Source: Bugula neritina
Lineage: Eukaryota > Animalia > Bryozoa
Direction: 5' to 3'
Length of the DNA stretch: 64,000 bases
Assembly: GCA_964035545.1 (NCBI GenBank)
Contig: OZ037767.1
Span: 26,242,628-26,306,627 of the forward strand
Of this stretch, positions 50 to 42,101 are shown one piece after another. The position numbers and the translations under genes are program-made. Under the pieces are notes generated by a model. It ran no database searches and had not been told where the DNA came from. It saw only the letters and a list, made by a program, of their open reading frames with translations. Every line of letters starts with the position of its first letter. Positions within the stretch are counted from its first letter, which is position 1.

Positions 50-3000
50 TTATCTTCTGAATTTCCTCGCTTTCTTAGCACTTGGTTCACCACTGTGGGA
101 GTGCAAGTACTCTATGCACTTAGTCGATTTGCATTGCTGTGCCTGTAATTGTCAAGTTAAATATGCTACAGCATGAACCCTACTCTGTAAAACCAAATTG
201 CTAGAAAATCTACTCTACAAAGTTTGTAACATCAAAATGGCTTCAATTAATAGCAAATGCTTAATTTTGTAAACTTGATATCAAAACAGAAATATTAGCT
301 AATTTTATGGATGTGAAGTGACATTTGGAATTTAAACTTTATAGACAACGCTTAGCAGAGGCTAAAAAATAAAGATTGCATTGAATGAATTGACATCATT
401 TATATATGGGCACTCTTATATATTTCTGATGTGTTTAAATATATTATAGTGTACTTGCAAGCAGTCAAGCACTGTGTTTCATAATATATACTACACAACA
501 ACATACATTGATTTTTGCAAATGTTGTTTCTTATAACTTTTGTCAGATTTTGCAAAGTAGGTGCAGTAATGGAGAAATTGAGAAAAGCCTGTGTTCTAGA
601 TTAGAAATTTAGCATGAGAAGCTATGTTCTCGAGAGAGTTTCAACCCGTGATCCAAACCAAAATGCAATAACAAAGTTAAACAACTTAGGCTATCCCAAT
701 TTCTTCACCACTGCACCTAAATAGATGGTACTTGTGTGTAAAAATTAGTAAAAATTTTGCTTTACCATTTCTAAAGGCGTCTTGGAGCTGTAGTCAGCAA
801 CTGTCATGGAGGCACCAGCAGCAGCAAATGCTTTCAACAGATCCACATCATTACGAGCAGCAGCTCTAGAATGAAAATAGTTTTCACTGAACAAGAACAG
901 AGTTCTGCTATCTGAAAACATCAGAGCAGCAATGGCTGAGAAATGGATGAGAAACTCGACTATTTAGGGAGCAAAATAAAGCGTAAATTTGGAGTAATAT
1001 CTAAGCTTTTGAATCAACCTGTAGCTGAGATTTACTAGTTTAATAACACTGACTTGTTGAGCTCAACTCCGAGTTCCGTTGAATCCATAGTCAGGTGAGC
1101 TCCATGTCTGGACAACAACAGAACATTCTCCATCTTTTTGGATTGTACAGCTTCAAAAAGTGCAGATCTTCCCAATCTACCAGACAAGAACATGCAGTTG
1201 TATATTATCAACATGAATTTTTTCTAACTTCTTAAAGTTCTTCAAGAATAGATATTGCAAGGGTTTTTAAGATTTGTATTTGGGCAGGAAGCAGGAGCTG
1301 CATGAAGTGTTCAAGTAGTAAAACAAAACAGTTCAGCACCTATTGCATATAATTATATTTTCAGATTCTACATTTCTTATTAGGTAGTTGAGAGGGGATT
1401 CCCAACTGTGGTTCCTATAGGACAATAGAGATAATTTTTGTGTACAAAAAGGCAAGGAAGAAAAAAATATCTGATTAACAGACAATGGATAAGGAAAAGA
1501 GTAAGATAATAATTAGGAGAAAAGAAAGAGCAAGAGTAAGGTAATGATCAGAGCAATAATTAAATTATCATATTATATTATGTGAAACTAGAAATGTGAA
1601 AGGTTGTAGGTAAGGTAAGAATTGGGGCAAGATTAGAGTGTAAAGATAAAAGCAATAGCATGGAATTCGATAAATATGAATTCAGGAATGGAGTATTGGA
1701 AAATGAAAAAGCATAAAATTAAAAGAACAAGTGGAGAGAGAGTGGGGGAGGGAGAGGGACGAAGGAGAGAGAGAGAGAGAGAGAGAGAGAGAGAGAGAGA
1801 GAGAGAGAGAGAGAGAGAGAGAGAGAGAGAGAGAGAGAGAGAGAGAGAGAGAGAGAGGAGGGGGAGGGGAAGAGAGAGAATGTAGAATCATGAGGTTATA
1901 TTTAGCTTACCGATCTCTTGTCTGAACTGAGGCCCCTTTCTTTATGAGATCTTGAATTATGTCCGTTTTACCTTCTATTACAGCAAAATGCAAAGCTGTT
2001 TTCCCCTCACTGTCTTTGAGTTTCAAGACTCCAGGCTAAAATACAGTATTGTGTGCTATGAAAATATTATAGTATTACTGAGTTAACAAGAGAAATTATT
2101 TATGATGCAAGTCAAGATAGGAAAATGCTGAGGCAACACTTCTTTATAGACTTTGAATGTTACTGTATATCAGACCAGTGTCTAATGGTATTGTACCTCT
2201 TTTTTGCATATGTCTTCAATTGCACTCTTGTCTCTCTTCTTGATAGCCAGTTGCATTATGGGAAGGTAGACAGCCTCTTTCAAGTCAGCAGTGCTCTAAA
2301 TTATATGTCACTCATTTTACCCAATGGAATTTCAAACACTGATTCAAATAAATTATGACTCCCTTATAAATTGTTTCCCTTTAAAACTTGTTATCTTACA
2401 GGCACATGAACACAACGTTTCTATAATCAAATAGGATTTGTTTTGCACTTATGTTTCGTATATTTACACATGCTATAAGTGACTTCTTACCTGCGCTGTT
2501 CTGGCGAGAGAAGATTCAATACCAACAGCTGACAATGTTTTAGCTACAGCTTTACTACCAGTTGGTGCTACAGTCAGCTCTCCTCTTAGATCTACTGCCA
2601 TTTGCTGGGAAAAAACATAGTATGAAGTTATTATTCTTGGGAGGCAATAATATGTATACATGTACACACACACGCACACGCACACGCATGCGCGCCCACA
2701 CGCGAACATGCACAGACACACATCATACACATTGTACACACCATGCATATCATGCACATCATACACATCATACACATTGTACACATCATACACATCATGC
2801 ATATCATAATATACCTCTTTAATATCATCTGGAGAACCTGGATATTTAGTAATGAGGTAAGAAAGCTTCATAAGAGATGCCTCTGTAGTCATATCTCCAC
2901 CAGCAATAACCCCAATGCCCTCCAACACCTGTAACATAGCGTAATATTTTATTATACATTGTACATTTCTACAATGAAGCAATAAAATGCAATGCAAAAC

Positions 3001-39800: not shown

Positions 39801-42101
39801 TCGAATTTTAGTTTTTATGCCTTATGACTTTTCTGTAAAGTAACTATGTCATTAATACTTGGTTTGTAATGTACATTTACAATTAAATGTGCTCTTTATA
39901 TTATAAATAATAAAATTATTAATAAATTTAGAGGCAATGAGTAAAGCATCTCAGATTATCACCACTAAAACCATGATGATTGATAAAGCCAAAATCGTTC
40001 ATTAAATATTTCTTTATTTAATATTTATTTAAGAACATTATTTTATTACATCATTTATAACTATAATAAAATTTAATATAAAATATGTTTTTTGTATCAT
40101 TAATAAAGTTATTATTCCATGCAGAGGCCATTACTAATGCACCTCAGCAATTCAATATTAAAGCCATGGTGGTTGATGATGAGAACACTTATATTGAGTA
40201 TGGAGTGCCCTACCCACTCTGGAGAGGAGCAGGTAACTCCTACAGAACATGTTTACTTGTCAGATAGCATGCAAAGTTGATGTGTGTATGTGTGTGTAAA
40301 CCATATATCATCGCTTCAAATTGTAGTGCATTTTTGAAAAAAGTCATGTTGACATGAATAAAAGTATTGCATTAACTACGTGTATAAATATTAGACTACT
40401 AATGTGTACATGCTGTATAAGCCATCACTTCTCATGTATTCATAACATCTACATGTATACTCCAATATTGTAGCTATCAAGTTTGAGCCAGATATCTCCA
40501 ACTTTTCTATTTTACGAGTCAAAGTTACAGCAACTGGAAAAGGGCCGATTCAACCATGTAAGATGGCTCGACTTTTCACTGACGTTGGAACGGTAAATGG
40601 AAACTTATGTTTCACTAGCTTTCCTTTTATAAGATGTCTTTTTAAATTGAAGTAATTATAAGATGGCAGTGAGTTGTATCATCACTAAATCTTTGGTCAT
40701 TTGAGACATATAATTAGCTAAATAATATATTGTCTTCACATGAGCAAGTTTAACTATGTAAAAGTAACCAGGCAAATTACCTTGTAGAGTTTGTTTGAGC
40801 CTTTTATTATAGATAATTTATAAACAAAGAAAAAGTTTGTTTAGAGACCTAAAGCTATGGTAATGGATTTCAGTGGTGTAATTAATTGTAGTTATTATAT
40901 CGAAAGGGTCGACTCTATATTGTATATATTATTGTGGAGATCGACTGCATCGACCTCCAGCGACTTGTATCTATGGTCGACAGTGGCACCACTAGTAACA
41001 ACCAATCAGGACTGACATACTAATTGATAGCAGGTGGAGCTAGCTACTCGTAGTGGAAGCGCTGAGTAGCTAGCCGGGCAGAGCAGCTTGGGACTTCATT
41101 TAGAGTAGTTGTGTGTAAAGGCTCACTTATTATGTAATCGTTTCAATTCATGTTAGCAGTAACTAGAGTTTCTTGTATCTTGTAAATAATAAACTTGTCA
41201 TAACGTAAATAACCTGGTGTAGTAGCTTTGTTTAAGTCGACCCACATAATATAGTGAATTGCGAAATTCACTACACTATGTCTTGCATTGGTGTTGACTA
41301 GTTACACTAAGTGGTATGAAACTCATATCCTCAAATTCCAAATCTAAAGTGCGCTTTTTTCTTACATTTATGTAGATTCAAAACGGTTATGACAACGATA
41401 ATAAACTAATGATAATGCGTCCCTTTGGAGTTACATACCCAGTGGATGAGACCCAGATAGTGCAATCAGACGAGTGGATACGAAACGTGAGACCTTACAC
41501 TCTTTATAGAAATGCCAATTATTGCAACTGGGCATAATTCTTTAAATAATGTTTTAATAATTTGTGCAATTTTTATTCTCTATTACTCATGACTAATGAT
41601 CTTTTACATGAAATTTGAGGATAAAAAGCATGCAGTGTTAAAATAGTTAAAGCTAGTTGCAAAATGGCTTAAAACGTATAAAGATTTATTCTTTAAAATA
41701 GCAAATGATCAGCTAGATGAACTTTAAACAATAAATATAAAAACATAAGGTATATAATCTGCTTAAAGTTTATTTATATGAACAGAAATTAATATTTCAT
41801 ACTTAATAAAAATGACTATACCTAAGATTTTCTCCTAGTTGAAAACTTAAAATATTACTTGTTATTGCATTGTAGAAATTACTCGTGGTTGCAGTTTGTA
41901 AGTTACCAAAAGCAATAAGCAATTTTGTAGAACATGTCTTCAAGCCCTCCTCAGGAACGAGCTGATTTTGAGAAAGCTACCCGAGAAGGCCTCGCTTTCC
42001 TTCTGAAGTATGAAGACCCCTTAACTGAGTTCTTCAACAACCAATCAATGTACTTCATGCTGAAAGCTGATGGCACATGGGAGCAAACTACTGCTCCTTA
42101 A
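36813..42101 (+). CDS. NTAN1: Protein N-terminal asparagine amidohydrolase homolog, copy B; 9 coding exons, about 327 aa
   Basis: Exons 36813-36908, 37366-37468, 38101-38166, 38443-38578, 39199-39272, 40125-40232, 40474-40592, 41376-41486, 41931-42101 (TAA); total 984 nt, all GT-AG; TDEATTCH and GHFDG intact. Confidence 0.92.
39372..39612. repeat. (GCAC)n/(AC)n microsatellite in NTAN1-B intron 5
   Basis: Directly visible; much shorter at about 13934-13960 in copy A. Confidence 0.9.
40859..41275. mobile_element. Probable solo LTR in NTAN1-B intron 7
   Basis: 417-bp insertion absent from copy A (empty site about 15059); TSD CTAT; short inverted ends (ggtaatggatttc ... gaaattcactaca) ending in CA; internal CCAAT and AATAAA. 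Confidence 0.75.

What the first reader, a model, noticed from the sequence alone, without database searches (positions are those of the whole stretch)
50..42101. Co-duplicated head-to-head cassette of two unrelated asparagine deamidases (ASPG plus NTAN1): a candidate animal Asn-deamidation gene cluster
Seen: an intact ASPG (-) and an intact NTAN1 (+) are divergently oriented, with ATGs about 4.5 kb apart in cassette A and about 8 kb apart in cassette B, and the pair has been duplicated as a unit. Known: ASPG hydrolyses free Asn using Thr nucleophiles; NTAN1 is a Cys hydrolase of a different fold that deamidates N-terminal Asn in the Arg/N-degron pathway; the human genes are on different chromosomes. 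Inference: two non-homologous enzymes performing the same Asn-to-Asp plus ammonia chemistry being adjacent and co-amplified suggests a selected, co-regulated module acting on both free and peptide-bound Asn. Possible roles (ammonia or pH control, Asp supply, Asn depletion in defence or digestion) are hypotheses only.
Basis: partly seen in the sequence, partly recalled or inferred. Interest (0 to 1): 0.9.

Follow-up and report, generated by a model that had tools for sequence, protein, structure and literature searches.

The report
Bryozoan array of two asparagine deamidases
In the bryozoan Bugula neritina, two unrelated enzymes that both strip ammonia from asparagine sit back to back and have been multiplied together (5 and 8 copies, mostly intact), which hints at an unusual demand for breaking down asparagine, but it is not yet shown that they work together rather than being chance neighbours.

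Summary
The genome is Bugula neritina tzBugNeri2.1 (its length matches exactly). The window lies in a ~210 kb array of 5 open ASPG genes and 8 NTAN1-like genes (6 usable, 1 nonsense, 1 pseudogene); four head-to-head pairs. It is not haplotype duplication: one read set holds four cassette versions, and an independent, diverged B. neritina assembly has the same pair. Both genes are under purifying selection across copies. Conventional NTAN1 (chr 1) and a second ASPG lie elsewhere. The array NTAN1 is a fast-evolved duplicate (35% identical) that keeps the catalytic Cys/His and the N-terminus-binding Glu but has a changed second-residue pocket. Against a tight co-regulated cassette: each gene was also duplicated alone, the 4.5-8 kb spacer is no more conserved than introns, and innexin and GMC-oxidoreductase genes were co-duplicated (2-3 copies). 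Neither protein has a signal peptide. Expression and synteny outside B. neritina could not be tested. Best reading: two adjacent families kept multicopy by a probably shared need to deamidate asparagine (0.5); chance neighbours 0.35. The scan noted the same array from the next window only.

The parts
50..6798 (-). ASPG-A: class 1 type I asparaginase plus ankyrin repeats, 15 exons, 612 aa, open; T40, D128, S129, T160, D161, K233, Y353 correspond to guinea pig T19, D84, S85, T116, D117, K188, Y308
6799..11337 (.). Head-to-head spacer A, 4,539 nt; conserved at intron level only, no CpG island, contains dispersed repeats
11338..16128 (+). NTAN1-like A: 9 exons to 15891 plus a probable short last exon; open; C80, H97, T74, Q55, T78, T79, S274, S275, E280 correspond to human C75, H92, S69, Q51, T73, T74, S254, T255, E260; GC-AG intron 4
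20323..20504 (+). Orphan NTAN1-like exon 9, remnant of a partial duplication; four more lie outside the window
22371..28780 (-). ASPG-B: 15 exons, 612 aa, open, 97.7% identical to A, dN/dS 0.17
28781..36812 (.). Spacer B, 8,032 nt: 1.5 kb local duplication (29104-30604 and 33952-35452, 98%), 3.2 kb insert (30438-33630) unique within the 264 kb read, and loss of about 1.2 kb present in spacer A
36813..42101 (+). NTAN1-like B: 9 exons, open through the whole fold, early TAA trims only the tail; 92.7% identical to A, dN/dS 0.22
52596..62296 (+). NTAN1-like pseudogene without an ASPG partner: donor of exon 3 changed to GA, donors of exons 4 and 6 deleted (21 and 32 nt), LTR element in intron 8
58634..62056 (+). 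Recent LTR retrotransposon in the pseudogene: identical 195-nt LTRs, 5-nt target duplication, 776-aa ORF with protease and integrase but no RT match (observed only)

Best explanation
Two neighbouring tandem families of active asparagine-amide hydrolases that selection keeps multicopy, probably for a shared need to deamidate asparagine in bulk. History (inferred from sequence): a DNA-level duplicate of NTAN1 came to lie back to back with an ASPG paralogue, evolved fast, then stabilised. Each gene first multiplied alone (2 ASPG types, 3 NTAN types, introns about 25% apart); recent unequal crossing-over (3-7%) then copied the junction pair repeatedly, and a larger block duplication took innexin, PAN-domain and GMC genes along. 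Function (inferred, not shown): both are cytosolic; ASPG turns free Asn into Asp and ammonia by the Thr/Tyr/Lys mechanism; the NTAN1-like enzyme uses Cys80-His97-Thr74 to deamidate an Asn with a free alpha-amino group, most likely on short peptides with an altered second-residue preference, serving catabolism rather than N-degron signalling. Each gene probably has its own promoter. The most plausible setting is a tissue or stage with heavy protein breakdown (gut, polypide regression); that part is a guess.
For: Shown: all five ASPG frames open and 6 of 8 NTAN frames usable, where neutral decay predicts 11-44 and 3-28 disabling changes per pair. dN/dS 0.10-0.29 and 0.19-0.57; Fisher p about 1e-8 for A versus B in both genes. 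Catalytic motifs identical in every copy. Array NTANs group with B. neritina NTAN1 (100/99) on a stem of 1.82 versus 0.04. Copy numbers 5 and 8 exceed the 2-3 of flanking genes. NTAQ1, ATE1, glutaminase and the Asn-synthase family match are single loci, whereas the class 2 asparaginase family has at least 5 loci. The pair is present in a lineage at dS about 0.25. A rough chance of landing next to an ASPG is 2e-4 (2 loci, 20,264 genes; my arithmetic).
Against: No expression data: the three runs look like DNA and gave no exact splice joint. No activity data. No bryozoan outside B. neritina could be examined. The region is a duplication hotspot with unrelated passengers. A genome-wide scan has many chances to find a same-substrate pair. 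Human ASPG also has PAF acetylhydrolase activity, so Asn need not be the shared substrate.
Confidence: 0.5

Rival explanations
1. Chance neighbours in a duplication hotspot. Each family is functional and retained for its own reason (for example ASPG as lysophospholipase or asparaginase, the NTAN1-like enzyme on a specific protein substrate). The pair is copied together only because crossover units span the junction.
For: Innexin pairs (3 copies), a PAN-domain gene and a GMC oxidoreductase (2 copies each) were co-duplicated and their tested exons are largely open. Solo copies of both genes exist. The spacer is unconstrained and of ordinary length for a genome with one gene per 10.7 kb. Bryozoan gene order is shuffled quickly (PMC11789643), which creates new neighbours. 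NTAN1 is not next to ASPG at the conventional locus or in Lottia.
Against: Same substrate and same bond in two unrelated folds is unlikely for a random neighbour (about 2e-4 to 7e-4). Both genes expanded beyond their flanks, alone and together, at similar depth. Pure hitchhiking of one gene is excluded by selection on both.
Confidence: 0.35
2. A tight, co-regulated module driven from a shared bidirectional control region.
For: The divergent pair recurs four times in this assembly and in the other lineage with a similar 4.6 kb gap.
Against: Spacer identity to the other lineage is 71-94% where it aligns, like introns (83-90% for most); 0.75 kb is replaced there and about 1.2 kb is lost in cassette B. 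No CpG island. Partnerless copies carry only their own proximal upstream DNA and stay intact.
Confidence: 0.1
3. Assembly artefact: uncollapsed haplotypes.
For: The species is highly heterozygous (PMC7576161). One 11.6 kb repeat outside the window is 99.97% identical and could be an artefact or very recent.
Against: Five and eight copies at dS 0.05-0.3. All 36 listed differences in run X1 match assembled paralogues, with variants private to three other cassettes. The assembly is curated HiFi at 132x. Several copy types occur in independent metagenome contigs.
Confidence: 0.02

Closest known systems
Animal ASPG / 60 kDa lysophospholipase (class 1 type I asparaginase with ankyrin repeats; PDB 4R8K, 5DNC, 9S7Y)
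   Same: Domain order, all catalytic and main binding residues, and similar exon scores against mammalian ASPG as the second B. neritina locus.
   Different: Five near-identical tandem copies plus a 55%-identical paralogue 9.7 Mb away; Asp190 replaced by Ser; Arg-rich N-terminal extension and basic C-terminal tail.
NTAN1, protein N-terminal asparagine amidohydrolase (PF14736; PDB 6A0E; CNF1/YfiH-like fold)
   Same: Cys and His of the triad, Gln51, Thr73, Thr74, Ser254, Glu260 and the appended C-terminal region; intron positions of exons 6-9 shared with the conventional B. neritina gene.
   Different: Eight copies on a long branch, 35% identical to the conventional gene; Ser69 to Thr, Thr255 to Ser, conserved Arg52 to Glu, Ala205 to Met, Ile268 to Thr, Thr271 to Gly, two short insertions; N-degron partners ATE1 and NTAQ1 not amplified.
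Non-homologous metabolic gene clusters of eukaryotes (plants and fungi; a few animal cases, from my own knowledge)
   Same: Unrelated enzymes, at least one a relocated neofunctionalised duplicate, next to each other and amplified.
   Different: The two enzymes would do parallel, not successive, steps; no co-expression shown; no conserved shared control region.
Ordinary tandem arrays in segmental-duplication hotspots (birth-and-death evolution)
   Same: Chimeric copies, orphan exons, pseudogenes, transposon insertions and passenger genes.
   Different: Two unrelated families with the same chemistry both expanded and both stayed under selection.

Membership tests
ASPG (class 1 type I asparaginase with ankyrins) | Asparaginase N and C domains followed by ankyrin repeats | tested here: met
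   PF00710, PF17763 and Ank families above cut-off, exon by exon
ASPG (class 1 type I asparaginase with ankyrins) | Thr19, Thr116, Asp117, Lys188, Tyr308, Asp84, Ser85 | tested here: met
   Motifs present in all five copies; T116, D117, K188 and Y308 placed by PDB alignments; T19, D84 and S85 by motif; roles from PMC12128190
ASPG (class 1 type I asparaginase with ankyrins) | Hydrolyses free Asn | not testable with these tools
   needs an assay
NTAN1 | PF14736 homology and descent from NTAN1 | tested here: met
   Exon 9 above cut-off; sister to B. neritina NTAN1 at 100/99; shared introns
NTAN1 | Cys75/His92/Ser69 triad | tested here: met
   Cys80 and His97 kept; Ser replaced by Thr74, as in CheD (PMC7022378); identical in all 8 copies
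NTAN1 | Nt-Asn recognition residues Gln51, Asp71, Thr73, Thr74, Ser254, Thr255, Glu260 | tested here: inconclusive
   Five kept; Thr255 to Ser and Asp71 to Glu are conservative, but T255A abolishes human activity, so the effect is unknown
NTAN1 | Hydrophobic second-residue pocket (205, 208, 209, 264, 267, 268, 271) | tested here: inconclusive
   Phe264 kept; Met at 205 where catalytic relatives have Gly, Ser or Asn; Thr at 268, Gly at 271. Direction of change not modelled; the full-length protein could not be folded by reference
NTAN1 | Deamidates N-terminal Asn for the Arg/N-degron pathway | not testable with these tools
   Indirect: ATE1 and NTAQ1 are single loci and a conventional NTAN1 is kept
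Co-regulated metabolic gene cluster | Adjacent non-homologous enzyme genes | tested here: met
Co-regulated metabolic gene cluster | Linkage conserved in relatives | tested here: inconclusive
   Kept in a second B. neritina lineage, but so is ordinary flanking DNA at that distance; no other bryozoan reachable
Co-regulated metabolic gene cluster | Conserved shared regulatory spacer | tested here: not met
   Spacer no more conserved than introns, with parts lost or replaced
Co-regulated metabolic gene cluster | Co-expression | not testable with these tools
   No RNA run offered; runs X1-X3 look like DNA

The most novel reading that the evidence does not exclude
The array NTAN1 has been converted from an N-degron signalling enzyme into a bulk metabolic deamidase for very short Asn peptides or free Asn (an asparaginase on the CNF1/YfiH fold), and it forms with ASPG a selected animal gene cluster of two unrelated enzymes that do the same chemistry.
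Probability: 0.15. Interest if true: 0.82.

Novelty: new variant of a known kind. Interest (0 to 1): 0.52.

Why it matters
NTAN1 is normally a single-copy enzyme with no known in vivo substrate as of 2020 (PMC7022378). A natural eight-copy, fast-evolved paralogue with a changed peptide pocket is a ready test of how this fold's specificity shifts. If the linkage with ASPG is selected, it would be a rare animal case of unrelated enzymes clustered by shared substrate, and would point to an unrecognised asparagine-catabolic demand in a bryostatin-hosting bryozoan. It also offers natural animal asparaginase variants. I found no paper on it. If the linkage is chance, it remains an unusual but ordinary tandem array.

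Tried and rejected
Haplotype artefact: rejected. Hitchhiking of one dead gene: rejected, both under selection. Horizontal transfer or retrocopy: rejected, since intron positions match the conventional genes and the tree places the array inside Bugula. Secreted toxin or digestive enzyme: no signal peptide, and the C-terminal lid that separates NTAN1 from its toxin-fold relatives is kept. Accelerated ASPG: not seen; it scores like the second locus against mammalian ASPG, so which ASPG is ancestral is open. Led nowhere: representative search with exon 9 gave only B. neritina pieces and one spurious hit; two metagenome scans; ESM Atlas on a partial protein; single-sequence fold of the conventional NTAN1, pLDDT 38; alignment A1 was wrong and not used; the bacterial promoter scan does not apply; two papers were not held.
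Full report
Source. The window is G000:C3:26,242,628-26,306,627 of a 216,009,554-base genome. That length is exactly the Bugula neritina assembly tzBugNeri2.1 (curated HiFi 132x plus Hi-C, 20,264 genes; PMC11480708), and the nearest protein found is a B. neritina entry. Coordinates below are window coordinates; negative values lie upstream.

Observation. ASPG-A has 15 exons on the minus strand from ATG 6798 to the stop at 50, 612 aa, all GT-AG. 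NTAN1-like A starts at 11338 and has nine exons plus a probable short tenth; intron 4 is GC-AG where paralogues have GT. ASPG-B (28780 to 22371) is open. NTAN1-like B (36813) is open to a TAA at 42099-42101 that trims only the tail. ATG gaps are 4,539 and 8,032 nt. Pfam confirms the families exon by exon.

The array is larger. Over 264 kb read there are five full ASPG genes (ATG at -84739, -2310, 6798, 28780, 76431; all minus, all open) and eight NTAN1-like genes (-80266, -58223, 11338, 36813, 52596, 82017, 94577, 106249; all plus), plus orphan exons. One NTAN copy has a single nonsense codon (-80266) and one is a pseudogene with three lost splice donors and an LTR element (52596). Four head-to-head pairs exist; one ASPG and four NTAN copies have no partner. 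Intron divergence falls in two layers: about 25% between two ASPG types and between three NTAN types, and 3-7% among recent copies. The copy at 76431 is a chimera of the two ASPG types. The simplest history is two small single-gene arrays back to back, later unequal crossovers spanning their junction, and a larger block duplication that also copied an innexin pair (3 copies), a PAN-domain gene and a GMC oxidoreductase (2 copies each).

Not an artefact. In run X1, all 36 listed differences from cassette A match assembled paralogues, including variants private to each of three other cassettes. An independent assembly (GCA_010799875.2, Virginia) has the same divergent pair 4.6 kb apart at 82-86% overall identity, like the 83% at the conventional NTAN1 locus; synonymous distance is about 0.25 in all three genes. 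Metagenome contigs show further copy types in that lineage. So the pair is older than that split, but at this distance ordinary flanks are also still collinear, so this is weak evidence for selection on linkage.

Both genes are under selection. dN/dS is 0.10-0.29 among ASPG copies and 0.19-0.57 among NTAN copies, significant for A versus B in both (p about 1e-8). Intron-derived rates predict 11-44 disabling changes per ASPG pair and 3-28 per NTAN pair if neutral; the pairs tested have none within the fold. Neither gene is a decaying passenger.

Origin. A conventional NTAN1 lies on C1 and a second ASPG at C3:16.49 Mb; their exon boundaries match the array genes where I could read them, so these are DNA-level duplicates, not retrocopies or transfers. 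The array NTANs are 33-35% identical to conventional B. neritina NTAN1 and are its sister group (100/99) on a stem of 1.82 versus 0.04 changes per site; the tool warns that long branches meet here, but this pair also has the highest identity in the set. The array ASPG is about 55% identical to the second locus in conserved exons and is no more diverged from mammalian ASPG than that locus. Conventional NTAN1 has no ASPG neighbour in B. neritina or Lottia.

Active sites. ASPG keeps the residues named for guinea pig asparaginase (PMC12128190): T40, D128, S129, T160, D161, K233 and Y353, in all five copies. Against human NTAN1 (PMC7022378) the array enzyme keeps Cys75, His92, Gln51, Thr73, Thr74, Ser254 and Glu260, the last of which binds the free alpha-amino group. 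Ser69 is Thr (as in CheD), Thr255 is Ser, Asp71 is Glu and the otherwise conserved Arg52 is Glu. The second-residue pocket differs (Ala205 to Met, Ile268 to Thr, Thr271 to Gly). I infer an active deamidase of N-terminal Asn with shifted preference; whether it accepts free Asn is unknown (human NTAN1 does not, from my memory of Cantor et al. 2011, which was not held). Neither protein has a signal-like N-terminus.

Is the pairing functional? For: same substrate and bond in unrelated folds (about 2e-4 to 7e-4 for a random neighbour); both expanded beyond their flanks; ATE1, NTAQ1, glutaminase and the Asn-synthase family are single loci while class 2 asparaginase-family genes number at least five (not classified). 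Against: partnerless copies, passengers, a spacer no more conserved than introns with parts replaced or lost, fast gene-order shuffling in bryozoans (PMC11789643), and the many chances a genome-wide scan has. No RNA run was offered and no exact splice joint was seen; one joint in runs X2 and X3 (11423 to 11919) could be a spliced or a short-intron paralogue and cannot be told apart. No other bryozoan was reachable.

Verdict. Real, selected and, as far as I could search, undescribed. I put shared selection for Asn deamidation in loosely linked families at 0.5, chance neighbours at 0.35, a tight shared-promoter cassette at 0.1 and artefact at 0.02. The neofunctionalised NTAN1 family is the firmest novelty. 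Interest 0.52.

Limits. Spliced models were searched exon by exon by reference; the joined proteins were used only inside scripts and the joined search and fold were left out. The Polinton-like and LTR elements were only observed.

Noticed in passing
window 52596-55848: The NTAN1-like pseudogene lost three splice donors (one by substitution, two by 21- and 32-nt deletions); two of ten deletions hitting donors has p about 0.012 under random placement, post hoc.
   Followed up: partly
window 44058-46505 (-): Non-LTR retrotransposon ORF of 815 aa with an RVT_1 match, inserted between NTAN1-like B and the pseudogene.
   Followed up: partly
window 58634-62056: LTR element with identical 195-nt LTRs and a 5-nt target duplication; gag-protease-integrase ORF without an RT match, so probably non-autonomous and recent.
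   Followed up: partly
G000:C2:29.20-29.22 Mb and C3:14.25-14.30 Mb: At least five class 2 (Ntn) asparaginase-family loci, two and three in tandem; animals usually have three such genes (own knowledge).
   Followed up: no
L014 (G000:C3:16.49 Mb): The second ASPG has Cys in place of the conserved Gln of the GSQ motif (Gln143), which the array copies keep, so the single-copy gene may be the more derived at the active site.
   Followed up: partly
L034-L036, about -53 kb to -37 kb: Polinton-like element inside the array, with several long open frames; also noted by s1-469568. Observed only.
   Followed up: no
L026-L030, -140 kb to -128 kb and -106 kb to -94 kb: An 11.6 kb repeat at 99.97% identity carrying an innexin pair and the last ASPG exon: a very recent duplication or a local assembly duplicate.
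   Followed up: no
L046 versus window; L048 versus C1: The Virginia assembly, typed as 'S' by its authors, differs from the UK assembly by about 17% in non-coding DNA and dS about 0.25, so the two are deeply diverged lineages under one name.
   Followed up: partly
L046:12959-13140: A one-base frameshift in NTAN exon 9 of the draft assembly is absent from a 99.8% identical metagenome contig, so it is probably a draft error that truncated the NCBI model KAF6028945.1.
   Followed up: yes
window 30438-33630: 3.2 kb insert in spacer B, unique in the 264 kb read, with a short Cys-rich ORF remnant; probably a decayed DNA transposon.
   Followed up: partly
L027-L028, L036-L038: Flanking genes of the array: ABC half-transporter, CTHRC1-like, PAN-domain, innexin pair and GMC oxidoreductase.
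   Followed up: partly
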